From positions 1 through 64,000 of IMG/VR virus record IMGVR_UViG_3300025141_000016: a stretch of 64,000 nt of DNA. The stretch is one strand, 5' to 3'. The translations under genes were made by a program, and so were the position numbers. The notes beneath the pieces were generated by a model. It was not told where the DNA came from. It worked only from the letters and a program-made list of their open reading frames with translations, and did no database searches. Position 1 is the stretch's first letter. Every line of letters starts with the position of its first letter. Positions 4,818 to 33,997 of the stretch are shown piece after piece.

Positions 4818-5834
4818 ATGTCCAAAACCATTACCGCAACTGATCGCTCCCGCTTGATCCGGCTCGCATCCTCGATGCCTGCTGGATCTCCCAAGCGGAA
4901 GGCAATCCTCAATGCAATCGCAAGTACGGATCAAACGGATTTCCTCGACACGAGACTCGACCGGGCCTGGAAAAAGGCCCTGAAGTCGTATTTCGCATGG
5001 AAGCAGGATGGGGAAAAGACCGATTCCCGCCTCTACCAGCAGCTACGCCAAGACCCCACAAACGAGCGTGCCAACTCCACGATGCTGGAACTGCTTGCCC
5101 AATACCGAAAAGAGGGTGGGAAGCTGCTCAAAACTGTGAAAGCGATCTACGCTGCCGCAGAGGGCCACCCCATCAGCAAGCAGTCTGACTTCCGTCAGGG
5201 GAAGGGGAACTTGGACCATGCAGAGCATGGTCTCAAGTCCTTCACCCCCTCCAAGTACGACAACCCCGTGGACATGATGTACCACGGCTCGTATGGCTAC
5301 CAGATGTTGATGAGCGCAATCGAACACTTGGCCTACGCACGCCACAGTGAGGGCCTGAAGACTGCTTCTACGCGGACCCGAACTGCAAAGTACAACACGA
5401 AGCTGCGGGCGACGGACACGTTGTCAGAGGCCGCCATGTTGGGTGTGGCTGCCCCCATCCCCCGGAGGGGGTTGAAGACTGCTTCGACTGGTTGGGTCAC
5501 GGATTTGTTCACCGCGTGGCAGGACAAACGCATTGACAAGCACGACTTCTATACTGCTCTTTGGCCTTTCTGGAAAGACGGTCAGATCCGGCCTGCCGAG
5601 GTAGCTGCCCTTACCCTCGCTGCTGACTCCACCTTTGGTAAAGGAGTTCCTGCTGGCGTGGTCAAAATGCGGTTGGGGGACATTGAAAAGGGTTTTGATC
5701 TCGGTGAGGATGTGGATGCCATTATCCGACCCATAAGCCGCAACATCCTACGTCGTCTTGGGTTGAAGACTGCTTCTACGCGGACCCGAACTGCAAAGTA
5801 CAACACGAAGCTGCGGGCGACGGACAGGTTCTAA
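4818..5834 (+). CDS. Modular head-associated protein with GLKTAS linkers
   Basis: Start reassigned to ATG 4818 (RBS AAGGAG). N-terminal DRSRLIRLAS motif, three GLKTAS linkers and a duplicated KTASTRTRTAKYNTKLRATD. Confidence 0.75.
   Translation: MSKTITATDRSRLIRLASSMPAGSPKRKAILNAIASTDQTDFLDTRLDRAWKKALKSYFAWKQDGEKTDSRLYQQLRQDPTNERANSTMLELLAQYRKEGGKLLKTVKAIYAAAEGHPISKQSDFRQGKGNLDHAEHGLKSFTPSKYDNPVDMMYHGSYGYQMLMSAIEHLAYARHSEGLKTASTRTRTAKYNTKLRATDTLSEAAMLGVAAPIPRRGLKTASTGWVTDLFTAWQDKRIDKHDFYTALWPFWKDGQIRPAEVAALTLAADSTFGKGVPAGVVKMRLGDIEKGFDLGEDVDAIIRPISRNILRRLGLKTASTRTRTAKYNTKLRATDRF
5356..5826 (+). repeat. 63-bp exact direct repeat pair (5356-5418 and 5764-5826), plus a partial copy near 5469-5485
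   Basis: TGAAGACTGCTTCTACGCGGACCCGAACTGCAAAGTACAACACGAAGCTGCGGGCGACGGACA occurs twice, identical. Confidence 0.9.
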
Positions 5835-5998
5835 CTCCCCACCCCTCGGGCTTCGGCTCCAGCCCGTACATGAGATTGGTACACACCTCGCCAGTGCCCT
5901 CTTTGGTCCCAGAGATGGTGGCCGAGGAAGATGAGCCCGGTGGGCGTGGTCCACACGCCGAACCAGACCAGAGGAGATGGGTAGGAGGGAGGAGTCAT
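5831..5998 (-). CDS. Possible small hypothetical protein (55 aa)
   Basis: ATG..TAG frame MTPPSYPSPLVWFGVWTTPTGLIFLGHHLWDQRGHW... fills an intergenic gap. No clear RBS. Confidence 0.25.
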   Translation of the reverse strand: MTPPSYPSPLVWFGVWTTPTGLIFLGHHLWDQRGHWRGVYQSHVRAGAEARGVGS

Positions 5999-6041
5999 AG
6001 CACAAGCCCGGTATAGAGAGAGTAGAGAGAGTAGGGGGTGT

Positions 6042-6056
6042 CGGTAGTCCTGCTAT
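6042..6056 (+). promoter_or_regulatory. Late-type motif
   Basis: CGGTAG TCCTG CTAT. Confidence 0.7.
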
Positions 6057-6096
6057 ACCCCTCCTCCGGGTAGACACAGATCGGAGTGCCCTACCG

Positions 6097-7656: not shown

Positions 7657-7664
7657 GAGTTTTG

Positions 7665-9014
7665 GTGGCTATAACATTCCCTACAACAGTCCAGTACAAG
7701 CGAAGACAACGACCCGCTCTGGAGGTTGGCACGCTTGGGCGCAGTCGCGTTTATCTTGTGCAGATGCCCCCTTCCCTGCTGCGGCTTGTCTACAAGGAGG
7801 GCAGGCGCATAGAGGGCTTGGGTGGGTCCAGCTATGACAAGGTGAAGTGGGATTCCGGCCCCAACGAGGGCAAAAAGGTAGCCATCAGGACATTGGAGGC
7901 TTGGGCTCAAAACGCGGAATCGGGTGGCCACGCGGGAAGCCAGGATGCCGCTCGCTACAGGGACCAGATTACGAACATTACAGGGAAGACCGCTATGAGC
8001 AACCCCGACGATTTTTGGACCAAACTGGCTACCGGACACACAAACACCGTGCTCGCTCACGGGATGGACCGCCATCTGGGTGCCCCCCTGGGTGACTCTT
8101 TTGAGGGAGTCCGTGTGTTGAGTGACGTGGGCCGTGCTGCTCATGCTCTTTCGCTTCCTGTGGCCGCTGGGGTCAAGGTGTCCTTTGCTGGAACCCTGGG
8201 TGCTCTCATGGCCCACGATGACTCGCCTGCCGATGGTGCCATCGGAGAGGTGGTCACGGTCAAGTCAGCTACGGGGGAGATCACCCACCATGATGGCAAG
8301 GTCTTCGTGAAGTGGGACGACGGTAAGTTCCGCCCCATCCACTCCGAGCACCTGCGTCTGGCTGGGTCCACGAGCAAGACTGCTTCCAAAGTCGTGAAGA
8401 TTCGCAAGGACGACAAGGGCAACGGCCTTTGGATTGAGGCGCGGGGGAAGCTGGAGGGACCGCTCACAGCGGCACAGGTGCTATCAAAGGTTGATAGCTA
8501 CCTTGATGACTCCGACGTGGTTGTCATGGGGCGTGATCATTCGCTGGGTCGGAACCAGACAGCGGTTCCCTACAGCAAAGCCCTCTATGTGATCCGCAAC
8601 AAGCGTGGGGATGTGATTGATGAGGGCTACTCCCTCAAAAACCTGTGGAATAAGTGGTTCGACCGGTTCCTTGGATGGAGGATGGCTTCCCAGGACAAGG
8701 AAGTCGCTGAACTGTTGAAGGCCAAGCCTGATAATGAGTTCCTACAGTCCGTGGAGGAGCAACTGGATGACGACCGCTCCCTGTCGGACAAGCAAGAGGA
8801 AGTTCTCGATGAGATTCAGGATGAGGTCAAGTCTGACAAGGCAGCTTCGTTCCGCGTGGGCACCCTTGGTGACCTCACGAACTTTTTGAAGGTTGCCGAG
8901 GGCAAGCTGATTCACACCAGTACCGCAGACCTGTGGTCCTATACGAAGGATGCGGATGGGGCTTTCCTCGTCTCACGCCTGTTTGACGATATGGGCGAGC
9001 CCTTGAAGGGGTAG
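7665..9014 (+). CDS. Modular head-associated protein
   Basis: RBS AGGAG, GTG 7665 (or TTG 7662). Segments are separated by GKTA|M, SKTAS|, WRMAS| and DKAAS|. Confidence 0.7.
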   Translation: MAITFPTTVQYKRRQRPALEVGTLGRSRVYLVQMPPSLLRLVYKEGRRIEGLGGSSYDKVKWDSGPNEGKKVAIRTLEAWAQNAESGGHAGSQDAARYRDQITNITGKTAMSNPDDFWTKLATGHTNTVLAHGMDRHLGAPLGDSFEGVRVLSDVGRAAHALSLPVAAGVKVSFAGTLGALMAHDDSPADGAIGEVVTVKSATGEITHHDGKVFVKWDDGKFRPIHSEHLRLAGSTSKTASKVVKIRKDDKGNGLWIEARGKLEGPLTAAQVLSKVDSYLDDSDVVVMGRDHSLGRNQTAVPYSKALYVIRNKRGDVIDEGYSLKNLWNKWFDRFLGWRMASQDKEVAELLKAKPDNEFLQSVEEQLDDDRSLSDKQEEVLDEIQDEVKSDKAASFRVGTLGDLTNFLKVAEGKLIHTSTADLWSYTKDADGAFLVSRLFDDMGEPLKG

Positions 9015-9024
9015 GACGGCTGCT

Positions 9025-9039
9025 CGGTAGTCGGCCTAT
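9025..9039 (+). promoter_or_regulatory. Late-type motif
   Basis: CGGTAG TCGGC CTAT. Confidence 0.7.
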
Positions 9040-9067
9040 CGCATCGCCCTCGATAGGAGAAACGTCC

Positions 9068-9748
9068 ATGAGTGCAGATCCAACCCGCGTTGCTTCGGCC
9101 TTCGCCAAGAAAGCGGCCATGAGCCGTGTCGCGGGGGAGGTCCGTTTCATCAAGGACCGGTCTGGCGATAAGTCAGAGTGGGGTTGGGGTCCGACTGGAC
9201 CCAGCGAGCGCCACATCCAAGAAGATTTTGTGTTCAATGCACGGGAACTCAAACCGCTGGCCAAGACCCTACGATCCGCTTTGATGGCCCTCGGCCATGC
9301 CACGTCAGCCCACAACCGGCTGGTGAAGGTCAAGTCGCGCAACGTGAGCCCGGATGGGAGTCTCGGCGGCAAGGGCTACATCCAGACGATCCCAGACATG
9401 CGGCGGCAGTTGATGAACTGCGTAGAGGCTTTGTCGGCCTTCACCGATACCATCTATGACGAGATGAACGCTCCCCACTGGAACCCCAGCGAGGACACTC
9501 TCAATGCTCGTGACCGCGATGAGGTCAAGGAGATCATTGAAGATGCGGAGGAGATCAAAGAAGATCCCGAAGGCTGGGCCGAGGAACAGGAAGAGGACAT
9601 GGATGATGAGGATGAGGACGAGGACGACCTCGACCCATCAGGAACCAAGATGGCCCGCAGGACGAAGGTAGCGGCTTCCCGTCGTGTTTCCGAAGGCACA
9701 GTATCTTCTCACCGGGTTCTCGCCCGGTACACTGGGAGGCTCCCATGA
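9068..9748 (+). CDS. Head-associated protein with N- and C-terminal RVA-type motifs
   Basis: RBS AGGAGA. N-terminal DPTRVASAFAKKAA, acidic tail, C-terminal HRVLARY. Confidence 0.75.
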   Translation: MSADPTRVASAFAKKAAMSRVAGEVRFIKDRSGDKSEWGWGPTGPSERHIQEDFVFNARELKPLAKTLRSALMALGHATSAHNRLVKVKSRNVSPDGSLGGKGYIQTIPDMRRQLMNCVEALSAFTDTIYDEMNAPHWNPSEDTLNARDRDEVKEIIEDAEEIKEDPEGWAEEQEEDMDDEDEDEDDLDPSGTKMARRTKVAASRRVSEGTVSSHRVLARYTGRLP

Positions 9749-11553
9749 GCAGTAACAAGAATGATCTCGATTTTGCAGGGACACACCTCCCGTCTGACCT
9801 GTTGACCCCGAGCCTGGGTTCCAACTACGGAATGGATGGCTTTGAGGACATGCAGTACGGCTTGGGTGTTTTGGAAGGGGTACTTGACCCCGCTCTCCAT
9901 CGTGCCCCCGCACTCCCCGACGGGGTGACACAAACTGCCGCCGCCGAGATGAACCTCACCGCCATGATGGAAACTGAACTGGCCGACTTGAAGTGGCTTG
10001 ACCCCTCCCAGGAACAGGATGAGGAGAGGCTTCCCCAGACCCCCGAGATGATCCCAGAGTTGGTGAACGCCTGGGGAGTGGACCGTCGCACCGACGGCGT
10101 GTCTGTTGAGGCTCATCAAAAGGAACTTTCCCGAGCGAGGTACGAACAGTCCCTCGCTGATAAGGGGACACCCAAACGAGCCAACGAACGGACCATGACG
10201 CGGGTTGTGACCCATGCCATGCGACGTTCTGTCGAAGGCCAGCACATTGACCGTATCGTTCGTGAGGCGTGTGAGAGCATGGGAGCCGAGTTCTCCCGCA
10301 TCGTTCCCCACCTTCGCATGGTCAAGGCAGAGCATGGTCTTGTGGGCAACGTCTTCGTTCGTGCCGCTGCCTACCCTGGATGGAGTAACGGCAAGGGGAA
10401 GAAGCACGTCAAGAAACACGCTCCGTCAGCCAAGTACATCATCGTCACCGCTGGCGATCTGGAGCAGGCCACTTGGATTCAGGATGGTCGTTGCGCCTAC
10501 ACAGGCAAGAAAGCCGTGGTCGAGATCCCGTGGAAGGAAGCCTACGCCCACTACGCCCCGCGTCTTCGTGCGACGGGACGTAAGGTAGCGTCGGGTGACC
10601 CGAGGGCGGCTCTCCAAGCCTCCTTCCTGTCACTCCCCGAAACCAAGACCGCCGAGAGCCATAAGCCTCGCGAGATTCGTGCGGGAGAGGTGTCTTTTGG
10701 ACATGAGTTCCGCCAACAGTTCGATGTAGACCCCGAAGCGGTGGGCATCAATCATGTCGCCACCGTAGATGGATTCCTCTGGGATGGTGACCCCACGGGT
10801 TCTCGGGTGAAGGCAGCGGACGACCTGCGAACCGCACTTGAAGGGGTGGCTGCACTCCGTGAAAGCGGGACATACAGCGGTGATGTGCTTGGGATTGCTC
10901 CCATGACGCGCACCGAGGTCACTCTGTCTGATGAGAACGCCGCTATCGCGAAGGCTGCTTCCGAGGGTGGTGTGTCTGGCAACGAGATCAGGAACACACT
11001 CCGCGCTGCTCGTCGTGCCATGTCCGAGGGACTGGCCGGGAAGGATCTCACTTCCTACATCACGCATCGGTTCGCTTCCAGCGTCCTCTCTGCGTCCAAG
11101 GGTCTTCTGGCGGGGCTTCGCTCACGCCATGAGGGTGCTTCGGGATTCCTCTATGTGGATGCCCAAGCCTATGCCTCGGCATCGGGGGCCGGAGGATGTG
11201 AAAAGGCTGCGTCCAAGCACCGCGCCAATCAGATCCCTTCCGTTGCCGCGATGCCTCGCTGTGCTTCCTGCACTCTGGCCCGTCCGTTGGAGGACGGGAC
11301 TCGCAAGTGTGGGGTCTACAACAAGTTGCTCCTGACAGACACCACGGGCAACGAGATCGAGCAGATCAAGGCCAAGAACATCAAGCAGGCTGAAATGTCA
11401 GACGCGGAGACGGTGGCTTCCTATTTTGCTCCCTCGTATGATCCCGCCGAGTTTGGGCTCCACAACGCCAACCTCGACAACATCGAACAGGCTCCTCTTA
11501 CCGAGACGGAAAAGCTGGGTGAGATCCTGTTTGATGGGTGGACCATCTCGTAG
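9745..11553 (+). CDS. Hypothetical head-cluster protein with internal duplication and C-terminal Cys cluster
   Basis: ATGA overlap with the previous gene. Two related segments (EHGLVGNVFVRAAAY / HEGASGFLYVDAQAY) and RCASC...RKC. Confidence 0.75.
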   Translation: MSSNKNDLDFAGTHLPSDLLTPSLGSNYGMDGFEDMQYGLGVLEGVLDPALHRAPALPDGVTQTAAAEMNLTAMMETELADLKWLDPSQEQDEERLPQTPEMIPELVNAWGVDRRTDGVSVEAHQKELSRARYEQSLADKGTPKRANERTMTRVVTHAMRRSVEGQHIDRIVREACESMGAEFSRIVPHLRMVKAEHGLVGNVFVRAAAYPGWSNGKGKKHVKKHAPSAKYIIVTAGDLEQATWIQDGRCAYTGKKAVVEIPWKEAYAHYAPRLRATGRKVASGDPRAALQASFLSLPETKTAESHKPREIRAGEVSFGHEFRQQFDVDPEAVGINHVATVDGFLWDGDPTGSRVKAADDLRTALEGVAALRESGTYSGDVLGIAPMTRTEVTLSDENAAIAKAASEGGVSGNEIRNTLRAARRAMSEGLAGKDLTSYITHRFASSVLSASKGLLAGLRSRHEGASGFLYVDAQAYASASGAGGCEKAASKHRANQIPSVAAMPRCASCTLARPLEDGTRKCGVYNKLLLTDTTGNEIEQIKAKNIKQAEMSDAETVASYFAPSYDPAEFGLHNANLDNIEQAPLTETEKLGEILFDGWTIS

Positions 11554-11562
11554 GGGGTTCCC

Positions 11563-14280
11563 ATGCGGGGATCCCCGTCCCAAGTAGCGCGTCGATGGAT
11601 GCAGGCTCGTGTCGAGCCTCTGAACCCCGAGCAGGCCAAGAAGTTCCGTAAGGAAGTGCTCATGCTTGCGAAGGCGGCGGAACGTGCGTCTTCTTACGCT
11701 GATGTGGAGCAGATTGTCCCTGCGGTGGCGAAGTGGAGACAGGCGTTTGACTATTACAACGCCGCTATCCGCAAAGAGTTGGAGGCTCGTGTCCGAGAGG
11801 GTGAGAATCGGAACATCCCTGTCCCCGAGGGTGCGACCCGACCGGATGCAGGGTGGGCAAAATACTACATCGAAAATGCCAAGCCGGTCTGGGATCTCTC
11901 TTACGAGGTAGGTTCGTTGCCGAGCGTCCCCAAAGTCACGAATCGACACGGTGGCGCTTTTGAGGAGCCCGAGGTGGCTCGTGCTCGGATGGTTGAGTTC
12001 TGGCTGGGCCGGGGGGATTCTCAACAGGAGGCAGAGCGGAAAGTAGAGGATTACCTGTTGGGGTCGCCCTCGTGGACCCGAGAGGAAGCCGAACAGAAAG
12101 CGGTGGATCGGTGGAAGGGGGAATCCCGTAAGTGGGCCAACCGTGTGCGTCGGAAGGCCAGGAAGACTTGGGCTTTCTACGCGGATCTGGCCGCATGGGC
12201 ACAACGGTCTATGGGAGGGGCGCGGGAGATAGCGATTGCGGTCCCCGACGAGGAAGTCGTCTCCCTGGAAGGGTTCCGTGTCATCTTCCGGGGCTTTGCG
12301 GAGTCCCCCTACCAAGACAAACTCCCCGCTGTGAAGCACGGGTTGAAGATGTACCGGCAGTTGGCCCAGAAGCGAGCCCCCATCCTGCTGAAACGGCAGA
12401 CACCGATCTTCATCGAGTGGACGTTTGAGCCGACCACCTCATCCAGTGCGGGAGCCTACTACCTGGGGAGTAAGATATTCGTGACCCCATGGAAGATCGG
12501 CAAGGACATTGGTGACTTCGTGAAGACGATGGCTCACGAGATGGGCCACCACATTTTCAGGACTTACCTGTCGGGGGCTGCAAAAAAGGCGTGGACTGCG
12601 TTCATTCGGGGTGACTACAAGGAACTCGACCTCCGCGAAGCACTTGCCATCATGCAACGGGTGGGGGCAAGAACCATCGTTGGTGATGAGTTGGCCGAGG
12701 AAGACCCCATCCTCTACCTCCAGATGAACACCCTGATGCACGACTCCAGATTCAAGTACATGGACCTTTTCAGTGTTGAGGACATTCAAGAATACCTCAA
12801 TGCAGGGAAAGACCCTATGGTCGCCGTTCCCATCAATCCCATCACAGGGTACGCGGGGAAAAACCCCGAGGAGGCGTTCTGTGAGGCTTTGGGCCTGTTA
12901 GTGGCCTATGGGAAAAAGGCGGTCCTGGGTCCGGTTCGGATGATGCTCCGGGGTGTTCTGCCGGAAGTCCGCATAGCGTCCGAGAAGACCATGACCGAGC
13001 GGGTAGCCCAGCGTAAGCACGCTGAAATGACGGGTGAGGCTTCCGTCGCCTTGATGAAATGGCTCTCCAAGGTCACCCAACGGATAGGGGTGGCGCGACA
13101 CGTCTACGTCGTCGGGGGAGCCGTCAGGAACTTTCTGATCGACAAGCCCATCAAGGACATTGACATGGTGGTGGACTCCCTCTCCTTACGAGGGAACCGG
13201 GACGCTGCTTGGGTGGCAAAGGAGATTGCCCGCGCCATCCCTACCAGCACGGACATTGTGACTGACGCTCTGATGGTGTCCAAGGTGTTCATCCAGGGGG
13301 AGTGGGACTTGGATGGCCACCAGATGAAGGATGAGGTCATCGAGATCGTCAACGCCCGAGCCGAGATTTACGAGCAGGACGAGGAGGGCAACTACCTGGG
13401 ACACAAGCCCGTCCGAGTTGACCCCACGACCTTGGAAATCGACGCAACTCGACGGGAGTTCACTTTCAACACCCTCATGTGGTCGTTGCTCTCGTTGGCC
13501 GATGGCCCGGAAAAGGCTGAAATCATTGACCTTACAGGGTGTGGAGTGCGGGATTTGGAGGCTCGCGAGATGCGTTGCCCCCAGGATCCCGACAAGACCT
13601 TCACGGAAGACCCCACACGGATCATCCGCACCATCAAGTTTGCGTTCAAGTACGGCTTCAAGCTGCCCCCGGACGTGAAGGCAGCGGCTACCCGGCAGGC
13701 TCGGGGACTGAAGCGAATCCCCTCAAAGGCGTGGGGAGCCCTTCGCGACATTGTGCTGGAGAACCCCCAGTACAAAAAGGCTCTGGGAGTCATGGATGAC
13801 CTCGGGGTCATTGACGTGCTCGCTGACATGGTGCGCGACGACCAGCAGTTCGCCACCACCCTGCTCAACTACTCCCAGAAGCGGGGAGTGGCGTTCATGT
13901 TTGACCTCATGGACCTTGGGATTCCTGTGGGTGCGCCCATGGGATTCATGGACTCTGCCCAACAACGCCAGTTCCGAGCGTTGTCTGTGGACATGGACCG
14001 AGATGAGGCCCTCCACTACCTTGAAGCCATCAAGAACCCAGGGGTGGCGTACAAAGATAAGAAGTTCGTGCCTTCCCTGGCCAGGGAGTACGGGGTGGAC
14101 CCGAAGAAGATGCGGGATTTCATGCCCGTGGTCACCCAGATTGGCAGGGATCTTCTTCTCGATGACCCCGAACTTCTGCACGATGCCCCTCGGCTGAAGC
14201 GAATGGTGAGGCGAGATTTGGGGTCCGCAAACGTGAGGGTGGCCTCGGAGTGGTTGCCGACTACTCGGGGAGGGTTTTGA
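11563..14280 (+). CDS. Multi-module protein: unknown domain + zincin (HExxH) + class II tRNA nucleotidyltransferase (CCA/PAP family)
   Basis: Zincin AHEMGHH...PEEAFCEAL. Nucleotidyltransferase motifs VYVVGGAVRN..DIDMVV, RAEIY..KP loop, DATRREFTFN and FTEDPTRIIRTIKF. Confidence 0.85.
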   Translation: MRGSPSQVARRWMQARVEPLNPEQAKKFRKEVLMLAKAAERASSYADVEQIVPAVAKWRQAFDYYNAAIRKELEARVREGENRNIPVPEGATRPDAGWAKYYIENAKPVWDLSYEVGSLPSVPKVTNRHGGAFEEPEVARARMVEFWLGRGDSQQEAERKVEDYLLGSPSWTREEAEQKAVDRWKGESRKWANRVRRKARKTWAFYADLAAWAQRSMGGAREIAIAVPDEEVVSLEGFRVIFRGFAESPYQDKLPAVKHGLKMYRQLAQKRAPILLKRQTPIFIEWTFEPTTSSSAGAYYLGSKIFVTPWKIGKDIGDFVKTMAHEMGHHIFRTYLSGAAKKAWTAFIRGDYKELDLREALAIMQRVGARTIVGDELAEEDPILYLQMNTLMHDSRFKYMDLFSVEDIQEYLNAGKDPMVAVPINPITGYAGKNPEEAFCEALGLLVAYGKKAVLGPVRMMLRGVLPEVRIASEKTMTERVAQRKHAEMTGEASVALMKWLSKVTQRIGVARHVYVVGGAVRNFLIDKPIKDIDMVVDSLSLRGNRDAAWVAKEIARAIPTSTDIVTDALMVSKVFIQGEWDLDGHQMKDEVIEIVNARAEIYEQDEEGNYLGHKPVRVDPTTLEIDATRREFTFNTLMWSLLSLADGPEKAEIIDLTGCGVRDLEAREMRCPQDPDKTFTEDPTRIIRTIKFAFKYGFKLPPDVKAAATRQARGLKRIPSKAWGALRDIVLENPQYKKALGVMDDLGVIDVLADMVRDDQQFATTLLNYSQKRGVAFMFDLMDLGIPVGAPMGFMDSAQQRQFRALSVDMDRDEALHYLEAIKNPGVAYKDKKFVPSLAREYGVDPKKMRDFMPVVTQIGRDLLLDDPELLHDAPRLKRMVRRDLGSANVRVASEWLPTTRGGF

Positions 14281-14780
14281 TGCTGACCCCATCCGCCGTG
14301 CGGGTAGCTGCGAGGGCAGCCTCCTATGAACGAGTGTTTTACAGCCCGACCCCGTTCACGCGATTCCGGGCCGTTTCCCAGAAAGCCCCCACCCTTATGG
14401 GGAAGCCCCAGGGGCTTTGGTACTCGTGTGGTAGTTCGTGGGAGGACTTCACTCGGAATGAGATGGGGGGTTCCCGATTGGGTGCCTACGCCTACCGGAT
14501 CGAGATCAACCCCTCTGTGATGCTCATCATCAAGGACAAGGCTTCCTTCCTGTGGTTTGAGGAGAAATACGGGGTTCCCGCCAAGTTCGGGGGGGAGGCT
14601 ATTGATTGGGGGAGGGTGGCTCAACACTACCCCGGCATCGAAATCTGTCCGTACCGGTCGAAGCAACGAATGGACCACGATTGGTACTATCCATGGGATG
14701 TGGCAAGTGGTTGCATCTGGTCTGGGGTCGCGATCAAGTCGGTGGAAGAAATGTCTTCCCTTGAACGTGGGTCGCGGTAG
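14280..14780 (+). CDS. Uncharacterised protein (KPxGLWYS...WDVASGCIW type, possibly ART-like fold)
   Basis: TGATG coupling to the previous gene. N-terminal SAVRVAARAAS leader, then a compact aromatic-rich domain. Fold assignment is tentative. Confidence 0.6.
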   Translation: MLTPSAVRVAARAASYERVFYSPTPFTRFRAVSQKAPTLMGKPQGLWYSCGSSWEDFTRNEMGGSRLGAYAYRIEINPSVMLIIKDKASFLWFEEKYGVPAKFGGEAIDWGRVAQHYPGIEICPYRSKQRMDHDWYYPWDVASGCIWSGVAIKSVEEMSSLERGSR

Positions 14781-18592: not shown

Positions 18593-18658
18593 ATGGCATG
18601 TCTATGGGTAAGACTTGTCATACTCCCTTTTGGGATTCCTACGTCGGAGAAAAACAAC

Positions 18659-27446: not shown

Positions 27447-27462
27447 GGGCCAGGAGAGTCCC

Positions 27463-28688: not shown

Positions 28689-30617
28689 GTGTCTGTTGTT
28701 GACCCTGTTCAAATCGTGGCCCGCTACCTCAAAGTGGCCGACCTCGCACCCCCTTTGGGGTATCCGGGTGGGTCATGCCACCTGATGGAGCGGATACGCG
28801 AGGAGGTGCGGAACCCCTCACTCCGAGAGGTGATGGTTGACAACCACCAGAACCAAGAGGATGGGTACGCTCGTGGGGAGGAGAGGGCGATCTATGATGA
28901 GTTCGATGAAGGGCCGATTCGTGGAACGTCCTTCAAGAAAGTCCTCATCACCCCTCACACCCAATACCGCATGGACCTGCGAGGGGTCACGCTAAAGGAT
29001 CTTGCACGCTTCTTCCAGGCGCTCCAACAGGAGTGGAACAAGGATCGGTCAAAGGGGAACACCTACTGGACACGCAAGCTGGAAATGCGCGGAAAGCAAC
29101 AGAAGGCCACCCTCAACAACCTCACCGTCGCCTTCCGGGTGCTGAACTTTGAGCCTCCCAGCGGGTCGGGGCGCACCAAAACCAAGGCCAGGATCGAGGT
29201 GATGGTCCACACCGCGTTCTGGAAGGGGCGCAAGAACCCGTCTCCTGTTCCCGAGAGTTCCTGTCAAGGTTGGGAGGGGTGGTCAAAGGAGTACCCGAGT
29301 GGTCAAGGGCTTGACCGGCTGTTCCCGAAGCGGGTAGCGGCTCGGTATGCGGATCGCATAGCCTCTCCCTCTGGGTTCATGTCCGAATACAAGGGGAAGA
29401 CCTGGGATAACCCCCTGGACCCCAGGATGCGTGTGTGGTCCTTCCAGAGAGACGGGGAGGATATGCCCCTCATCACCACCGAAATAGAAGCCAGCCGCTT
29501 TGATGGGGAGCCCGCGATCTGGTTGAAGGCTCTCATCTCTCCCCAAAAGAGGGGGACTGGAATGGCCTCTTCCATCTTGAAGATGATTACAGCGATGGCA
29601 GACAAGCATGACACCCTCGTCTACCTCACCGCGAAGCCCATGCCTGTTTGGGGGGCTGATAACCTCCTTTCCACATCCCAACTAAAGTCTTGGTACAAGA
29701 GGAACGGTTGGGTCCAGGCGCAGGAATACGGGGACATGATGGTGCGCTACCCCAAGGGTAAGACCGCCGATCTATCGCCCCCTCTCGGCTTCCCAGGCGG
29801 TCCCTGTCAGGTCATCGAGCGGATTGATGAGGAGATCCATGACCCAGGGTTGCGTGACCGTCTGGTGGACCAAGTAGAGGACGGCACTTCCCTGTCGAAC
29901 TCCAACGCTGCCAAGGTTTATGAACTGGAGGCAGAGCCAGGAGTTCCACGCTCCAAGTTCAAGAAGATCCTCATCACCCCCCACGCGCAGTACCGCATGG
30001 ACCAACGTGGAATCACGGTAGGTGATCTTCGGGTTGCCCTCATGGGGTTCGCGAAGGCGTGGAACGACGCACGTTCCACACAGAGCGTACAGGCTCGCAT
30101 GTGGGAAGACGACATGGCCTGGGGCGAGAAGATCGAGTGGGTTGACCCTCGTATCGGTTTGCAGATCGTCTTCACAGCCAGCAAGGGCACCGTTCGCCTC
30201 GTGACTGCTTTCTGGAAAGGTCAGTCTGACCCCCGACCGGTGGACGAGGAGTCGTGTGGGGTCCACCGCCATGCGGGAGGGGCTGGGGATTGCTACGAGG
30301 CCAACGGGCGGTATTTTATGAACCAAGCGGTCTTTCCCGGTTCGGATAAGGGGATGCGGCTGGTTCACGGTGAGGTCACAGGACAGGGCTCCCTGTCGGG
30401 GGTCAACTATGGCCACGCCTGGATTGAGGACGGGAACACTGTGATCGACAAGTCCAATGGCCGGAACGTCAGGATGCCCAAAGACGTGTACTACGCCTTG
30501 GGGCAGATTGACCGGAACGACAACATCCATGTCTACAAGCCAGAGGAGTTCCGCCGCAAGGTGATGCAGCATGAACATTGGGGTCCGTGGGATCTCCGCA
30601 CCTCGACGGGGCTTTGA
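28689..30617 (+). CDS. Four-module protein: RelE/DUF4258-like + GNAT + RelE/DUF4258-like + papain/transglutaminase-like
   Basis: Duplicated LxPPLGxPGG..ITPH(T/A)QYRMD.RG..TAFWKG. GNAT QKRGTGMAS..WYKRNGW. C-terminal GDCYE..HAWIE..VID. Confidence 0.75.
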   Translation: MSVVDPVQIVARYLKVADLAPPLGYPGGSCHLMERIREEVRNPSLREVMVDNHQNQEDGYARGEERAIYDEFDEGPIRGTSFKKVLITPHTQYRMDLRGVTLKDLARFFQALQQEWNKDRSKGNTYWTRKLEMRGKQQKATLNNLTVAFRVLNFEPPSGSGRTKTKARIEVMVHTAFWKGRKNPSPVPESSCQGWEGWSKEYPSGQGLDRLFPKRVAARYADRIASPSGFMSEYKGKTWDNPLDPRMRVWSFQRDGEDMPLITTEIEASRFDGEPAIWLKALISPQKRGTGMASSILKMITAMADKHDTLVYLTAKPMPVWGADNLLSTSQLKSWYKRNGWVQAQEYGDMMVRYPKGKTADLSPPLGFPGGPCQVIERIDEEIHDPGLRDRLVDQVEDGTSLSNSNAAKVYELEAEPGVPRSKFKKILITPHAQYRMDQRGITVGDLRVALMGFAKAWNDARSTQSVQARMWEDDMAWGEKIEWVDPRIGLQIVFTASKGTVRLVTAFWKGQSDPRPVDEESCGVHRHAGGAGDCYEANGRYFMNQAVFPGSDKGMRLVHGEVTGQGSLSGVNYGHAWIEDGNTVIDKSNGRNVRMPKDVYYALGQIDRNDNIHVYKPEEFRRKVMQHEHWGPWDLRTSTGL

Positions 30618-30618
30618 C

Positions 30619-32925
30619 ATGCCAAAGGAACTTTTTGACCAACTACAGAAGAAGCGCGTCCGAGTAGACCGGGACACCATGGAGATGCTGGAAGACTCGT
30701 CGGCCCGCAACCTCCGTGCCTCCACCGTTGCTGCTGCGCGGATGCAGGACAGCTTGGTTGCCATGGTTGCCGAGGTGGACAAGTGGCGCGGCAAGAAAGG
30801 GACTGTTCCTGGCCCTGGGGTCTTGTATTTCCGCCGTGACCCTTGGGATCTCCAGAAAGTCGGCAACGAGTTCTACCGGAGCAGCCGCGTCTGGATGGAT
30901 TACGTCATTGACCATCTCGCCATCCCGGCCTCCAAGGCCAAGTCCGTCGAGATGCTGGCGCGGTTGTTCAATCGGGTCAAGGCACCCAAAGACTATGTGA
31001 AGTGGTTTGACAAGAACGCCAAGCGGTGGACCTTGATGCGGCAGACCGTCAACTGGGAACCCCGAGGTGAGGGAGAGGAAGGGACGTTTTCAATCGGCCC
31101 CTTCACCGTCCACAACACCATCGGAGCGAGCGGGAAGACTCTGGAGCGGATCGTTCGTATCGTGGAAAAGGCAGTCAAGAACGCCCGTAAGGGAACGGGG
31201 CTTCCCGGCTTTGCCCGCACCCTTGGGGGCAATCTCTACATCGTAGGGAAGATCGGTCGTCCCAAATGGGCCGCGTGGTACATGGCTGGGAAGGATGCCA
31301 TCTACCTCCGAACTGTGCGTGGAATGTCCGAGAACGAGTCTGCCCAGCACCTCATACATGAACTGGGTCATCGCTATAAGAGCAAGATGATGGACCGGGG
31401 AATGTGGGACCGCTGGGTCCGTCACCATCGCCAGATGAAATCCAACCCGACCTCGACAGGCTTTCCTGATGTTGGGGTCAAACTCCCCCTGAAAGTGAAC
31501 AACAAGGATGCCGAGGTTGGCGAGTACATCGAAGGTGGGGCCAAGATCGTAGAGGTGGGGTCAGGCAGGGAGATCGGGACTGTCACCAAGAGTAAACTCT
31601 TGAAGTGGGTGATGAATGCAGAGGCCCAACTCGCTTTTCCGTCTATCTATGCGAGTAGTGATGCGGAGGAACATTTCGCGGAGGCATTGGCCATGAAAGC
31701 CATGGGAACCTTGGGAGCCGACCACGAGAGGGCGTTCGACGCAGTAGTGGCAGACGAGTCTGCTGCTCGTGTGGCGGCCCGTTACGCACTGAAGATCGCC
31801 CCCACCCCTGGCATGACCACCTATGTCACGGACAAGTCGAAGGAGAACCTGCCCACGGACATTGATCGTGAGGAGCAGGTGAATCTCCCATTACCGGGGT
31901 CAGCCACTCCGGGGGGAGAGGGCAGAGACATTCCGCAGTTCGTCTTCAACACACCTGACGTGGGGGACAAGATTCTACCGCGTACCTTGGGGATCCCAGG
32001 TGAGCAGTACGGTGACCCCACGAAGTTCGACTACAACACTCCGACACGCCGGTCGTTGACAGGCGCAGACGAGGAAGAAGAATCAGGTCAGAGCCGGTCC
32101 AACTCCTACGTCACTGATGTAGTCCGTCAACTGGTGGACGATGATGATGACGATGACGAGGGGATGGACAAGGAAGCCTACCGGCAACGCTGGACGAAGG
32201 GCAAACGGCAGCGCAAGTCACGGGGGCGCAAGAAGGAGAAGCGGAGGATGTACAACCGCCGCAACAAACAGACACGGAAGACGTACTCCAAGAACTGGCG
32301 CAAGAGGAACAAGAACAACAGTGCCTTCAAGCGCAGCAACAAGCGGCGTAGGAAGTCGAACCGCAAACGGCGTACTGCAAGTGCCCTGTTGGTAGCCCAC
32401 GCTCACCGCACAGCGGGAGTCTTGACGGTGCCGGACATCGCCTTTGCTATCGGCCCCGAGCAGATGCTTGGGTACGTTCGGTCTGTCTCCCCCATGTCGG
32501 GGATGGTCACCATCGAGTTGGACGAGGCTAATGCGGTCCCCTTGGACTCCCTGCCCGTCGATGTGTTCCTGCGGATGGCGGTCTTCCTGACAGACGAGGA
32601 CATTGATGCGTTCTATGACCTCGTGGACGTGGAGATCGGTCCCGAAGCCTACGACGACATTGATGAGGAAGGGGTACGGGAGTGTGCTCGGCTCTATGAC
32701 CGTGATCCCGACTCCAGCGAGTTTCAGAACGACTGCTTTGAACTGACAGGGGAGCATGAACTCGGTGCGATGGAGGCCCATCAACTGGAGTCTGTTTCCC
32801 AGTCGGTGATCACCGGAGCCATGGAATCGGGCCATGCCCGTAGCCTGGAAGATGCGGCCAACGAAGACATTTCCGAGGAATATGACCCCAGGTTGTACTA
32901 CGGCGAGGTCGAAGTTGAGCGGTGA
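30619..32925 (+). CDS. Multi-module protein with zincin (HExxH), basic tract and acidic C-terminal module
   Basis: Start ATG 30619. LIHELGHRY..YAS..EEHFAEAL; linker SAARVAARYALKIA; Arg/Lys-rich tract. Confidence 0.75.
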   Translation: MPKELFDQLQKKRVRVDRDTMEMLEDSSARNLRASTVAAARMQDSLVAMVAEVDKWRGKKGTVPGPGVLYFRRDPWDLQKVGNEFYRSSRVWMDYVIDHLAIPASKAKSVEMLARLFNRVKAPKDYVKWFDKNAKRWTLMRQTVNWEPRGEGEEGTFSIGPFTVHNTIGASGKTLERIVRIVEKAVKNARKGTGLPGFARTLGGNLYIVGKIGRPKWAAWYMAGKDAIYLRTVRGMSENESAQHLIHELGHRYKSKMMDRGMWDRWVRHHRQMKSNPTSTGFPDVGVKLPLKVNNKDAEVGEYIEGGAKIVEVGSGREIGTVTKSKLLKWVMNAEAQLAFPSIYASSDAEEHFAEALAMKAMGTLGADHERAFDAVVADESAARVAARYALKIAPTPGMTTYVTDKSKENLPTDIDREEQVNLPLPGSATPGGEGRDIPQFVFNTPDVGDKILPRTLGIPGEQYGDPTKFDYNTPTRRSLTGADEEEESGQSRSNSYVTDVVRQLVDDDDDDDEGMDKEAYRQRWTKGKRQRKSRGRKKEKRRMYNRRNKQTRKTYSKNWRKRNKNNSAFKRSNKRRRKSNRKRRTASALLVAHAHRTAGVLTVPDIAFAIGPEQMLGYVRSVSPMSGMVTIELDEANAVPLDSLPVDVFLRMAVFLTDEDIDAFYDLVDVEIGPEAYDDIDEEGVRECARLYDRDPDSSEFQNDCFELTGEHELGAMEAHQLESVSQSVITGAMESGHARSLEDAANEDISEEYDPRLYYGEVEVER

Positions 32926-32926
32926 T

Positions 32927-33997
32927 GTGCCATCGGCAGTGCGTGTAGCCAGCCGCTTCGCCTACGAGAAAGGGGACATTGGTGCCCCTACTCGTCCGGG
33001 GGGGCAGGACAACAAACGCCAGCACAAGCAAGAGCGGGGCGAGGCACGGAAACGCCGTATGAGGTATCGGAAGACTCGGATGCGTGACAAGCGGAACGTC
33101 CTCATCAACTGGCACACGAGATTGAAGCGTAAGCCCAAAGTCCGAGAGCGTCGTGAGCGGTACAAGGAAGATCCAGAGCGGTATAAACGCCGTGCTCCGA
33201 AGGAGTATGAGCGTCCCGATCCCGATAAAGTGGCCGCTCGGTTTGTAGAGCGTCTGGCGGGGGATGTGATCCTCTATGACCAGTGGAATCCGGCCAATGG
33301 CCAAATCAACCAGCCGGGGCTCGATGTGAACTACCGGGCAACGAGCCCCACCACTTACGAGATGGCACCGGATGAGGAGATGGGTGTCCCGGCAGGGGTT
33401 CGGGCTCCCAGCAACCAGACCGAGAACGTCCCTCCCGCTTCTTCTCGGGTCATCCCCGATGCCATGAAGGAGACGCTACGGGAGCAGTTGACCTATGTGC
33501 CCGCCCAGCGGCAAGCCGCAGCCACCATTCCCCAGATCCAGCAGAACTGTGGCCCCCTCGTTCACACACGTTCCCAAGGGCTGAAATACCGGCGTAAGCG
33601 TCTCTCACCGAGTGGCATGTCCACATGGACCGTCACAGGCTCCACGGGGAACTCCTACACGGTGAGGATCAAACCCATCCAAAAGGACAAGCGGGTCAAG
33701 CTGGTGAAAAAGATGCCCGTCAAGGTGTCCTGCACCTGCGAGTTTTTCCGCTGGCAGGGACCGGAGCACTGGGCCAAGGTCAATGATTTCCTGTACGGCA
33801 AGCCCCGTGGTACGGCATCGTTCCCCATCATCCGCGACCCCAAGAGCAAGCATTGGGTTTGTAAGCATGTGTTGGCGGTACTTCGGTTGGCCGTGAAGTG
33901 GCGGCGTGCTTCGGAAGGGGAGTATTCCTACGAGGGTCCGTTGGAGCCCATGGCTGACCCCACGCAGGTAGCCGTCCGCTTTGCCCTCGGTTGGTGA
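32927..33997 (+). CDS. Multi-module protein with basic tract and SWIM-type zinc finger
   Basis: Probable GTG start 32927. SCTCEFF..VCKHVLAVL, and three RVA/KVA/QVA-x-RF motifs. Confidence 0.75.
   Translation: MPSAVRVASRFAYEKGDIGAPTRPGGQDNKRQHKQERGEARKRRMRYRKTRMRDKRNVLINWHTRLKRKPKVRERRERYKEDPERYKRRAPKEYERPDPDKVAARFVERLAGDVILYDQWNPANGQINQPGLDVNYRATSPTTYEMAPDEEMGVPAGVRAPSNQTENVPPASSRVIPDAMKETLREQLTYVPAQRQAAATIPQIQQNCGPLVHTRSQGLKYRRKRLSPSGMSTWTVTGSTGNSYTVRIKPIQKDKRVKLVKKMPVKVSCTCEFFRWQGPEHWAKVNDFLYGKPRGTASFPIIRDPKSKHWVCKHVLAVLRLAVKWRRASEGEYSYEGPLEPMADPTQVAVRFALGW

What the first reader, a model, noticed from the sequence alone, without database searches (positions are those of the whole stretch)
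4818..33997. Candidate capsid-cargo polyprotein system: unrelated enzymes joined by shared RVAxR(Y/F) and K/R-x-A-S linkers
Seen: most head-cluster ORFs are strings of unrelated modules whose boundaries carry two motifs. Motif 1, [RKQ]-[VI]-A-x-R-[YF] or close variants: TRVASAF and HRVLARY (9068), SQVARRW and ERVAQRK (11563), VRVAARA (14280), GRVVAKY and WVALRY (14816), ARVAYAY (19076), QIVARY and KRVAARY (28689), ARVAARY (30619), VRVASRF, KVAARF and QVAVRF (32927). Motif 2, [KR]-x-A-[SADG]: KTAS x3 (4818), KTAS/RMAS/KAAS (7665), RIAS, KDAS, KKAG, KVAD, KTAD and RTAS. Motif 1 is usually followed within a few residues by motif 2 and then a new domain. I did not see these used as linkers in the tail/fibre genes (38.8-64 kb) or the minus-strand islands. 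Established: T4 internal proteins carry a capsid-targeting sequence removed by gp21, phiKZ gp175 processes many head proteins at a short motif, and herpes assemblins cut at x-x-A|S. Inference: motif 1 docks cargo in the prohead and motif 2 is cut by the assemblin-type protease (19609), releasing enzymes that are ejected with the DNA. This would be a plug-in effector-packaging grammar.
Basis: partly seen in the sequence, partly recalled or inferred. Interest (0 to 1): 0.92.

Follow-up and report, generated by a model that had tools for sequence, protein, structure and literature searches.

The report
Shared linker motifs in jumbo-phage head proteins
In a giant phage related to Bacillus phage G, the proteins encoded next to the capsid genes are built from swappable enzyme modules joined by two short conserved peptide motifs; one motif is very probably the cutting site of the head-maturation protease, and the other may be a packaging tag, so this looks like a new variant of the known way phages load and release proteins in their heads.

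Summary
In the plus-strand ORFs from 4.7 to 34 kb, [KR]-x-A-S occurs 28 times against 7.5 expected. Strict motif 1 occurs 5 times against 0.07. Neither motif is enriched in the TerL/portal, minus-strand or tail ORFs.

The window is the first 64 kb of a 297-kb IMG/VR contig of a jumbo phage. Its capsid protein is related to those of Bacillus phage G and Tunturi_5.

- In a 485-kb relative, [KR]-x-A-S sits at background everywhere except the head module, where it is about 3-fold enriched.
- The motif flanks the protease domain in all relatives, and it aligns at the portal N-terminus with phage G.
- It lies in disordered linkers and coincides with the points where modules are exchanged between relatives. 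These modules include HAD, topoisomerase IB, a CCA-type nucleotidyltransferase and HExxH modules.

I therefore read [KR]-x-A|S as the prohead protease site, with confidence about 0.7.

Motif 1 (P-x-x-R-V-A-x-R-Y/F/W) is a real short motif found across the closer relatives: 24 occurrences against 1.4 expected. It occurs at N-termini, at C-termini and at module junctions. Its docking role is untested, and it overlaps motif 2.

Overall this is a new variant of known kinds: T4 CTS with gp21, phiKZ/SPN3US propeptides, and polyvalent proteins. No cleavage or packaging has been shown experimentally.

The parts
2986..4707 (+). Portal protein, with a predicted N-terminal processing site RTA|S at aa 43-46 (nt 3112-3123)
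   Evidence: phrog_16240, E 3e-34. The site aligns with KMA|S of phage G gp14 although the two portals are only 27% identical.
4818..5834 (+). Internal head protein (338 aa) with four [KR]xA|S sites: aa 15, 181, 220 and 317
   Evidence: The N-terminal 17 residues end in RLA|S. The sites at 181 and 317 lie in a 67-nt direct repeat. No family match.
7665..9014 (+). Internal head protein (449 aa) with the sites KTA|S 238, RMA|S 339 and KAA|S 392
   Evidence: Only its C-terminus has a homologue, in LR745208.1.
9068..9748 (+). 226-aa protein with N-terminal motif 1 plus a tandem run of [KR]xA sites (MSADPTRVA|SAFAKKA|AMSRVA|G), and C-terminal motif 1 (RVLARY, nt 9713-9730)
   Evidence: The homologue in LR745208.1 is 53% identical.
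9745..11553 (+). 602-aa protein rich in sites (5 x [KR]xA|S), probably a core or scaffold-like protein that is degraded
   Evidence: Its 32%-identical homologue in L003 has 6 such sites.
11563..14280 (+). Two-module protein. It has N-terminal motif 1 (QVARRW, aa 7), an HExxH module (aa 7-472), the site RIA|S at aa 470 (nt 12970-12981), a CCA/poly(A)-type nucleotidyltransferase module (aa 473-892), and RVA|S at aa 892
   Evidence: PolyA_pol E 1e-14 and phrog_2244. PDB CCA-adding enzymes at E 1e-12. The homology breakpoint at aa 475 is 3 aa from the site. The HExxH module gives only a sub-threshold zincin hit.
14280..14780 (+). 166-aa protein with N-terminal motif 1 followed by a site (MLTPSAVRVAARAA|S)
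   Evidence: phrog_8582, function unknown.
14816..18583 (+). Five-module protein (1255 aa). HAD (aa 2-192); KDA|S 192 plus RVVAKY 198; topoisomerase IB (aa 198-456); KKA|G 456; module C (459-598); charged module D ending in KDAAAWVALRY (608-677); module E (about 700-1255)
   Evidence: HAD_SAK_1 and Topoisom_I. PDB TopoIB 6z01 at E 1e-8. Breakpoints at 200, 458 and 677 lie 0-1 aa from the motifs, supported by 10-16 HSP ends each. Alignment A3. AF2 gives a confident domain at 202-457 with pLDDT below 50 in 166-201 and 458-566.
18593..19060 (+). Conserved small head protein with RIA|S at aa 40 and KAA|S at aa 130
   Evidence: Sites are kept in 6 of 8 and 5 of 8 homologues, against 49% mean column identity.
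19076..19609 (+). Conserved head protein with KSA|ARVAYAYRKA (motif 1 at nt 19373-19390). In some relatives it forms the C-terminal module of 1000-1170-aa proteins
19609..21045 (+). Prohead serine protease (478 aa). Protease domain at about aa 34-265; conserved sites at aa 25-28 (RKAA|S), about 293-296 (KAA|N, which is KAA|S in most relatives) and 390-393 (RVA|S); helical C-terminal domain
   Evidence: phrog_18299. Alignment A1 has invariant H128 and S179. AF2 places the sites in low-pLDDT segments 1-33 and 266-332. BFVD fold hits to phage G gp19 and prohead proteases. Site conservation.
21055..22431 (+). Acidic repeat protein, the presumed scaffold, with RRA|S at aa 16, KKA|A at 412 and KRA|S at 421
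   Evidence: The terminal sites are kept in 3-4 of 4 full-length homologues. Breakpoints at 110 and 412 coincide with sites.
23354..24226 (+). Major capsid protein (HK97 fold). KLA|A at ORF aa 28 is uninformative
   Evidence: phrog_2522, E 9e-55. Relatives identified. The KLAA column is conserved, but the whole protein is 85% identical across relatives.
28689..30617 (+). Four-module protein. N-terminal motif 1 (QIVARYLKVA|D); module 16-225; RVAARYADRIA|S (nt 29331-29366); GNAT-like module 226-357; KTA|D 358; a repeat of the first module at 360-527; RHA|G 527; C-terminal module 528-642
   Evidence: Breakpoints at 227, 350 and 528 lie 1-10 aa from the motifs. Module exchange with L011 and L053. 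The GNAT hit is weak.
30619..32925 (+). Two-module protein. HExxH module (aa 1-384), then RVAARYALKIA|P (nt 31768-31800), a C-terminal module, and RTA|S at aa 585
   Evidence: The 634-aa L011 protein is the N-module of 28689 joined to the C-module of this protein at a motif 1. Breakpoints at 400 and 414.
32927..33997 (+). 356-aa protein with motif 1 three times: N-terminal RVA|SRF, internal KVAARFVERLA|G and C-terminal QVAVRFALGW-stop. It also has a SWIM-like zinc finger and RRA|S at aa 326
   Evidence: The SWIM hit is sub-threshold. The breakpoint at ORF aa 123 is 2 aa from a site.

Best explanation
The window is the head-morphogenesis end of a jumbo phage of about 297 kb from the phage-G-related group.

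Between the portal and the protease-scaffold-capsid genes, and again just downstream of the capsid genes, lie genes for internal head proteins. Several are polyproteins: strings of unrelated modules joined by short linkers. The modules include a HAD phosphatase, topoisomerase IB, a CCA/poly(A)-type nucleotidyltransferase, two HExxH modules, a GNAT-like module and a SWIM-like module.

Shown here:
- The linkers carry [KR]-x-A-S.
- This motif is enriched only in the head module.
- It is conserved at aligned positions around the protease domain, at the portal N-terminus and at the scaffold ends.
- It sits at the edges of folded domains.
- It coincides with the points where relatives have exchanged or inserted modules.

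Inferred:
- The proteins co-assemble into the prohead.
- The prohead serine protease (19609-21045) then cuts after Ala in [KR]-x-A|S. This removes propeptides, trims itself, the portal and the scaffold, and separates the enzyme modules. The modules stay in the head and leave with the DNA.

The second motif, P-x-x-[RKQ]-V-A-x-[RK]-[YFW], is a short motif selected at the peptide level and independent of position. It is found at N-termini, at C-termini and at junctions. My best guess is that it is the incorporation signal, binding scaffold, shell or portal much as the T4 and P1 capsid-targeting sequences do. That step is the weakest.
For: - Enrichment and specificity.
- Whole-genome control in LR745208.1: [KR].AS observed/expected is about 1 in 23 bins of 20 kb and 3.1-3.2 in the two bins holding the head module.
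- Clade-wide 2-5-fold enrichment in 36 of 38 head loci, including phage G (17 observed, 4.5 expected) and Tunturi_5 (15 observed, 6.4 expected).
- Conserved sites flank the protease domain, including KIA|S in phage G and KVA|S in Tunturi_5. They lie in low-pLDDT segments.
- The portal sites align at 27% identity.
- In-domain matches are not conserved, whereas linker matches are.
- Homology breakpoints fall within 15 aa of a motif in 36% of cases against 18% by chance (P=0.0005). All well-supported breakpoints in the cargo proteins but one (aa 609 of the 14816 protein) lie within 0-10 aa.
- The TopoIB module is bounded by KDA|S and KKA| in different contexts, and L054 has an HExxH module inserted at that linker.
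- The AF2 domain edges at 202 and 457 match the sites at 192 and 456.
- Motif 1: 24 observed against 1.4+-1.2 expected in non-redundant relatives, with 4 N-terminal and 4 C-terminal copies. Codons differ between copies, so selection acts on the peptide.
- Protease identity.
- Precedents: T4 CTS with gp21 (PMC9958956), the SPN3US AXE motif with several sites per propeptide and protease self-cleavage (PMC5694885), and the P1 DarB N-terminal signal (PMC9024508).
Against: - There are no proteomic or biochemical data for this clade. The phage G virion study that might hold N-termini was not available.
- The protease model gave no PDB fold hit, and sequence and profile searches of the PDB found nothing. 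Assigning the assemblin fold therefore rests on BFVD matches and on the known fold of the family.
- The core of motif 1 is itself a [KR]-V-A-[AS] match, so the two motifs are not independent.
- Motif 1 is missing from the phage G and Tunturi_5 head regions.
- In LR745208.1 its strict form is scattered over the genome (8 observed, 1.7 expected) rather than confined to the head module.
- One strong breakpoint, at aa 609 of the 14816 protein, has no motif nearby.
- Whether the enzymes are ejected is pure inference.
Confidence: 0.55

Rival explanations
1. There is one signal, not two. Motif 1 is a subclass of the protease site, [KR]-V-A|[AS]-R-[YF], perhaps with an exosite helix. The linkers then carry tandem cleavage sites that excise short spacer peptides, and nothing docks.
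For: - RVA|A and RVA|S fit motif 2.
- Sites occur in runs 4-8 residues apart: RVA|SAFAKKA|AMSRVA|G, RVA|ARYADRIA|S and KSA|ARVA|YAYRKA|.
- Several sites within one propeptide are known in SPN3US (PMC5694885).
Against: - The protease's own conserved sites and the portal and scaffold sites lack R-[YFW] at P2'-P3'.
- Several motif-1 copies have Q, W or N instead of K/R at the first position, or lie at the extreme C-terminus where a cut would release only 4-6 residues.
- Phage G and Tunturi_5 keep motif 2 without motif 1.
Confidence: 0.22
2. The cargo's own HExxH (zincin-like) modules, rather than the prohead protease, process the polyproteins. This is what has been proposed for polyvalent proteins of phages and plasmids.
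For: - HEMGHH in the 11563 protein, HELGHR in the 30619 protein and HEIGHQ in the module inserted in L054.
- The idea of autoprocessing by such metallopeptidase (MPTase) domains is set out in PMC5512222.
Against: - Pfam support for these modules is sub-threshold only.
- The best-conserved [KR]-x-A|S sites are in the protease, portal and scaffold.
- The sites are also present in phage G and Tunturi_5 head genes that have no such module nearby.
Confidence: 0.1
3. The motifs are junction or linker peptides that are kept because they tolerate or promote module exchange, like the junction motifs of polymorphic toxins. They involve no proteolysis or targeting.
For: - The motifs coincide with recombination breakpoints.
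- One module is inserted exactly at a linker.
Against: - Codons differ between copies, so DNA homology is not what is conserved.
- The same [KR]-x-A-S is conserved in single-domain core proteins that are not shuffled: the ends of the protease, the portal N-terminus and the scaffold.
- Specificity is sharp at P3, P1 and P1'.
Confidence: 0.1
4. The pattern is chance or a composition effect in Lys/Arg/Ala/Ser-rich head proteins.
For: Head ORFs hold more K and R than tail ORFs.
Against: - Per-protein shuffles and 10-aa local shuffles both fail to reproduce the count.
- Other orders of the same residues are not enriched.
- The pattern is replicated in 36 of 38 loci from other contigs and is restricted to the head module in a 485-kb genome.
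Confidence: 0.01

Closest known systems
T4 internal proteins: N-terminal capsid-targeting sequence removed by the prohead protease gp21 (PMC9958956). The N-terminal capsid signal of P1 DarB is a second example (PMC9024508).
   Same: - A short terminal peptide lies next to a protease site on non-structural proteins encoded with the head genes.
- The protease also trims itself and the core proteins.
- Five window proteins begin with the motif within their first 13 residues.
   Different: - The consensus is [KR]-x-A|S, not L/I-x-E|.
- The tag also occurs at C-termini and between modules.
- The substrates are multi-enzyme polyproteins.
- Targeting is not demonstrated here.
Proteolytic maturation of giant-phage heads in phiKZ and SPN3US: the S/A/G-x-E (AXE) motif, many head and ejection proteins cut, several sites per propeptide, and protease C-terminal self-cleavage (PMC5694885, PMC10052503).
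   Same: - A jumbo phage.
- One short motif shared by many head proteins.
- Clustered sites.
- A site after the protease domain.
   Different: - An unrelated lineage, with a capsid protein of the phage G type.
- P1 is Ala and P1' is Ser, rather than P1 Glu.
- Module exchange at the sites has not been described for those phages, as far as I found.
Herpesvirus assemblin: cleavage at (V/L)-x-A|S at a release site between the protease and scaffold domains and at a maturation site
   Same: - Ala|Ser at the scissile bond.
- A conserved site directly after the protease domain, followed by a helical C-terminal domain.
- Prohead proteases share the assemblin fold (established knowledge).
   Different: - P3 is Lys or Arg here.
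- No PDB fold hit was obtained.
- The third catalytic residue is unassigned.
Polyvalent proteins of phages and conjugative elements (Iyer et al. 2017, PMC5512222).
   Same: - Two or more unrelated enzymatic domains in one polypeptide.
- Encoded beside virion genes.
- Extensive domain shuffling.
- Presumed delivery with the DNA.
- HExxH modules are present.
   Different: - That work proposes autoprocessing by zincin (MPTase) domains and does not use the word 'linker' at all (0 occurrences). Here, shared linker motifs and the prohead protease are implicated.
- The domain set differs: HAD of the RNA-repair type, TopoIB and a CCA-type nucleotidyltransferase.
Encapsulin cargo-loading peptides, and the junction motifs of polymorphic toxins (established knowledge, recalled from memory).
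   Same: - A short peptide at either end of the cargo that could bind the inside of an HK97-fold shell.
- A conserved junction peptide that marks where variable modules are swapped.
   Different: - The sequence differs.
- No binding has been shown.
- The particle here is a DNA-filled phage head.

Membership tests
Prohead-protease-processed internal head proteins (T4 IP/CTS-gp21 type) | A prohead serine protease is encoded in the head module | tested here: met
   phrog_18299 E 1e-12. Invariant His128 and Ser179 in 16 homologues. BFVD fold hits to phage G gp19 and to prohead, COG3740 and T4-type core proteases.
Prohead-protease-processed internal head proteins (T4 IP/CTS-gp21 type) | One short cleavage motif is shared by several head proteins and by the protease itself | tested here: inconclusive
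   The sequence statistics and positional conservation fit. Cleavage itself cannot be observed with these tools.
Prohead-protease-processed internal head proteins (T4 IP/CTS-gp21 type) | The T4/phiKZ consensus, with Glu at P1 (L/I-x-E or S/A/G-x-E) | tested here: not met
   The enriched motif has Ala at P1 and Ser at P1'. No [LIVSAG]-x-E pattern ranked among the ten most enriched gapped tripeptides.
Prohead-protease-processed internal head proteins (T4 IP/CTS-gp21 type) | The targeting peptide is sufficient to bring a foreign protein into the head | not testable with these tools
   This needs reporter fusions in an infected host.
Herpesvirus-assemblin-type processing | Scissile bond Ala|Ser, with a release site between the protease domain and a C-terminal domain | tested here: met
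   In silico only. K-x-A-[SN] is conserved after the protease domain in 27 of 33 homologues and also in phage G and Tunturi_5. It lies in a disordered segment.
Herpesvirus-assemblin-type processing | Assemblin fold with a Ser-His-His triad | tested here: inconclusive
   No PDB hit by fold or by profile. BFVD hits are to prohead proteases only. Ser179 and His128 are invariant and His163 is nearly so.
Polyvalent proteins (Iyer et al. 2017) | Two or more unrelated enzymatic or effector domains in one phage polypeptide beside virion genes | tested here: met
   HAD plus TopoIB, and HExxH plus a nucleotidyltransferase, encoded between the portal and protease genes.
Polyvalent proteins (Iyer et al. 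2017) | A zincin-like metallopeptidase (MPTase) domain as the processing module | tested here: inconclusive
   HExxH motifs are present, but the only Pfam hits are sub-threshold (DUF5700 at E 0.046 and another zincin family at E 0.18).
MuF/SPP1 gp7-type head-associated polymorphic toxins | An N-terminal MuF (Phage_Mu_F) domain | tested here: not met
   No Phage_Mu_F hit in any head-cluster protein.
Encapsulin cargo-loading peptide | A terminal peptide with the family consensus that binds the shell lumen | tested here: not met
   The motif sequence is different. Binding was not testable.

The most novel reading that the evidence does not exclude
A large clade of jumbo phages (at least 545 IMG/VR contigs by capsid protein) may use a transferable two-part peptide grammar. 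One part is a position-independent loading tag, P-x-x-R-V-A-x-R-Y/F/W. The other is a [KR]-x-A|S release site. Together they would let any enzyme module be plugged into the head cargo, released by the prohead protease and delivered with the DNA. That cargo would include a pre-packaged nucleic-acid repair and topology kit: an RNA-repair-type HAD, a CCA-type nucleotidyltransferase and topoisomerase IB.
Probability: 0.3. Interest if true: 0.8.

Novelty: new variant of a known kind. Interest (0 to 1): 0.64.

Why it matters
How giant phages select, load and release the many non-structural proteins in their heads is understood only for T4, P1 and, in part, the phiKZ group. This work gives three testable predictions for the phage-G-related group:
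- a specific cleavage consensus;
- a candidate loading tag;
- evidence that evolution swaps enzyme modules at exactly these peptides.

The cleavage consensus is also present in two cultured phages, phage G and Tunturi_5, so it can be checked directly by mass spectrometry.

If confirmed, it would explain how cargo repertoires diversify. It would also give a simple handle for packaging chosen proteins into large phage heads. Finally, it would show that enzymes such as topoisomerase IB and tRNA-repair-type enzymes travel inside phage virions.

Tried and rejected
- DNA-level search of the phage collection with 8 kb of the head region found nothing. Relatives were found only at the protein level.
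- A sequence search and a profile search of the PDB with the protease found nothing meaningful.
- Foldseek of the whole protease model against the PDB gave only noise. The likely cause is that 139 of 478 residues are disordered and the model cannot be trimmed. The viral library did give prohead proteases.
- Pfam on the isolated protease domain and on seven small or unassigned head proteins gave nothing above threshold.
- I tested whether motif-1 hits outside the head module of LR745208.1 fall in recognisable virion or cargo proteins. The result was mixed: a UvrD helicase with an intein, a VWA protein, a LigT-like protein, and several with no hits. It was not informative.
- The capsid-protein match KLA|A is conserved, but so is the whole protein, so it is not evidence.
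- The phage G virion paper (Gonzalez et al. 2020) is not held. The phage G multi-omics preprint used fully tryptic searches and reports no cleavage sites. The Tunturi paper has no proteomics.
- Recent DNA duplication as the source of the motif-1 copies is rejected because their codons differ.
- Composition artefacts are rejected.


Full report
**What the window is.**
The window is about 59% G+C. It carries a plus-strand head module:
- large terminase, 122-2050;
- portal, 2986-4707;
- a run of long ORFs to 18583;
- two small conserved ORFs;
- a head-maturation protease;
- an acidic repeat protein, the presumed scaffold;
- a 212-aa protein at the position where phage G encodes its capsid decoration protein gp26;
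- the major capsid protein.

Three more long ORFs lie at 28689-33997. Minus-strand ORFs and giant tail or fibre ORFs follow.

The capsid protein is 83% identical to one in the 485-kb uncultured phage LR745208.1. It is 50% identical to Tunturiibacter phage Tunturi_5 and 41% identical to Bacillus phage G. The window equals the first 64 kb of IMG/VR contig IMGVR_UViG_3300025141_000016, which is 297 kb long. At least 545 IMG/VR stretches encode a close capsid relative.

Every listed instance is present. Shuffling within each protein gives these results for the plus-strand ORFs 4734-33997:

| Pattern | Observed | Expected |
|---|---|---|
| [KR].AS | 28 | 7.5+-2.7 |
| [KR].A[SADG] | 71 | 38 |
| strict motif 1 | 5 | 0.07 |

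The terminase/portal group, the minus-strand ORFs and 6839 aa of tail ORFs show no excess.
- Shuffling within 10-residue windows does not remove the excess.
- Other orders of the same residues are not enriched.
- A blind tripeptide scan recovers R.AS, K.AS, RVA, VA.R and DPT.
- Position scans sharpen motif 2 to [KR]-x-A-S. Only Ser is strongly enriched at P1' (3.8x), only Ala at P1, and Arg and Lys at P3. Asp and Gly at P1' are at background.

**Specificity for the head, tested genome-wide.**
I fetched all of LR745208.1 in ten pieces, giving 151,771 aa of ORFs. The observed/expected ratio for [KR].AS scatters around 1 in every 20-kb bin, except the two bins that hold the head module, where it is 3.1 and 3.2. 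The same 2-5-fold excess is seen in 36 of 38 head loci from other contigs. These include phage G (17 observed, 4.5 expected) and Tunturi_5 (15 observed, 6.4 expected).

**Why motif 2 is probably the protease site.**
- *The enzyme.* The ORF at 19609 matches a head-maturation protease family. It has an invariant His and Ser. Its predicted fold matches phage G gp19 and several prohead, COG3740 and T4-type core proteases in the viral structure library. PDB searches were uninformative.
- *Its own sites.* In the protease alignment, [KR]-x-A-[SG] is conserved at the N-terminus. K-x-A-[SN] is conserved directly after the protease domain, even in phage G (KIAS) and Tunturi_5 (KVAS). [KR]-[VT]-[AS]-[SA] is conserved in the C-terminal domain. 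Matches inside the catalytic domain are not conserved. The first two sites lie in segments with pLDDT below 50.
- *Portal.* The portal site RTA|S aligns with KMA|S of phage G, although the two portals are only 27% identical.
- *Other core proteins.* The scaffold ends and the small conserved head protein 18593 keep their sites above background conservation.

This pattern is what is known for gp21 of T4 and for gp245 of SPN3US: self-trimming, portal and scaffold trimming, and clustered sites. Those enzymes use a different consensus (PMC9958956, PMC5694885).

**Modules and junctions.**
BLAST between window proteins and relatives shows blocks of homology that end inside the proteins. In the cargo proteins, all well-supported ends but one fall 0-10 residues from a motif:
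- 14816 protein: 200, 458 and 677, each supported by 10-16 alignment ends;
- 11563 protein: 475;
- 28689 protein: 227, 350 and 528;
- 30619 protein: 400/414 and 595;
- 32927 protein: 123.

Over all proteins, 36% of ends are within 15 residues of a motif against 18% expected (P=0.0005). The exception is the end at aa 609 of the 14816 protein, which has 11 supporting alignment ends and no motif within 59 residues.

One relative protein, L011 (634 aa), is the N-module of 28689 joined to the C-module of 30619 at a motif 1.

The alignment of the TopoIB module shows it in many contexts. It is always preceded by K-[DEQ]-A-[SA]-x-x-R-V-V-A-K-Y-type linkers and followed by L-x-K-K-A. One relative has an HExxH module of about 190 aa inserted exactly at the HAD/TopoIB linker, with motif-1-like peptides on both sides.

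AlphaFold2 on residues 1-700 gives one confident domain, 202-457. Confidence is low in 166-201 and 458-566, so the sites at 192 and 456 sit at the domain edges.

Module identities:
- topoisomerase IB: Pfam E 3e-24, PDB 6z01 E 1e-8, with a plausible catalytic Tyr before the KKA site;
- HAD of the RNA-repair type;
- class II CCA/poly(A) nucleotidyltransferase;
- only weak signals for the zincin, GNAT and SWIM modules.

**Motif 1.**
With its context, the consensus is P-x-x-[RKQ]-V-A-x-[RK]-[YFW] followed by a hydrophobic residue or Ala.
- In the window it lies within the first 13 residues of five proteins (9068, 11563, 14280, 28689, 32927).
- It lies at the extreme C-terminus of two (9068, 32927).
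- It lies at junctions in the rest.
- In non-redundant head-region ORFs of IMG/VR relatives, the strict form occurs 24 times against 1.4+-1.2 expected, again at N-termini, C-termini and inside proteins of 1000-1600 aa.
- Copies use different codons, so the peptide is what is selected.

It is therefore a genuine short linear motif. Its function is open, for four reasons:
- Its core is itself a [KR]-V-A-[AS] match.
- It is absent from the phage G and Tunturi_5 head regions.
- Neither the scaffold nor the protease carries it.
- In LR745208.1 its strict form is scattered across the genome.

I favour a loading signal, by analogy with T4 and P1 (PMC9958956, PMC9024508). This remains an inference.

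**Comparison with known systems.**
The system works like the T4 and phiKZ-type schemes, in which a shared protease motif processes many head proteins. It also resembles the polyvalent-protein idea of multi-domain proteins delivered with the DNA (PMC5512222). It differs in four ways:
- the consensus is Ala|Ser with a basic P3, closer to herpesvirus assemblin sites than to the Glu-specific phage enzymes;
- the substrates are polyproteins of unrelated enzymes;
- there is a second, position-independent motif;
- modules are demonstrably exchanged at the motifs.

I found no description of these motifs in the papers I could search.

**Verdict.**
- The protease-site reading is well supported in silico.
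- The docking reading is plausible but untested.
- Packaging and ejection of the enzymes are inferred.
- This is a new variant of a known kind.
- Interest is moderate to high because it is directly testable in two cultured relatives.

Noticed in passing
window 14816-16183 and 12979-14277: A topoisomerase IB module, an RNA-repair-type HAD module (HAD_SAK_1) and a CCA/poly(A)-type nucleotidyltransferase module are encoded among the head genes. If packaged, they would form a virion-borne DNA-topology and tRNA-repair kit. Poxviruses are known to package a type IB topoisomerase (from memory).
   Followed up: partly
window 6097-7656: This 519-aa ORF inside the head cluster has almost no Lys, a Thr/Ala/Gly-rich composition like the tail fibres, no copy of either motif, and a weak pectinesterase (beta-helix) hit. 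It may be a head fibre or a displaced spike-like protein.
   Followed up: no
window 4755-4798: A perfect (AGGTCG)n hexanucleotide repeat lies between the portal stop codon and the ATG at 4818. It reads as an Arg-Ser repeat if the ORF is extended to the TTG at 4734.
   Followed up: no
window 5356-5422 and 5764-5830: A 67-nt direct repeat, 99% identical and 408 nt apart, lies inside ORF 4818. It duplicates the peptide LKTASTRTRTAKYNTKLRATD, which includes one predicted cleavage site.
   Followed up: partly
window 20140-20300 (protease aa 179-230): Directly after the invariant Ser179, the protease carries invariant cysteines (C182, C189, C192, C203, C228). This looks like a zinc-ribbon insertion in the catalytic domain and is conserved even in phage G gp19.
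   Followed up: no
window 21055-22431: The presumed scaffold contains tandem copies of KGKKARALRAKALRMLRLADEEEASDEE-type units that alternate basic helices with acidic runs. The EEAS repeats account for the E.AS signal in the P3 position scan.
   Followed up: no
L054:1987-4845 (IMGVR_UViG_3300035698_004832): A 1607-aa relative carries an extra HEIGHQ module of about 190 aa, inserted exactly at the HAD/TopoIB linker. The HAD module is itself preceded by MRVASRF.
   Followed up: partly
L007:4882-7677: In this relative the protease homology (window ORF aa 202-492) forms the C-terminal part of a 931-aa ORF. This is either a fusion with an upstream protein or an assembly or frameshift artefact.
   Followed up: no
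L090:641-5863 (LR745208.1 300641-305863): A 1741-aa UvrD-type helicase interrupted by a Hint/intein domain is encoded far from the head module of the 485-kb relative.
   Followed up: no
window 16637-16846 (14816 protein aa 608-677): A short, highly charged module, ATKS..EKE..RLVR.SPKKKPPR.D..R....DPD..QD.KD.S.NFKDA..RVA.RY, recurs at or near the C-terminus of many otherwise unrelated cargo proteins in relatives. It may be the real functional unit around this motif-1 copy.
   Followed up: partly
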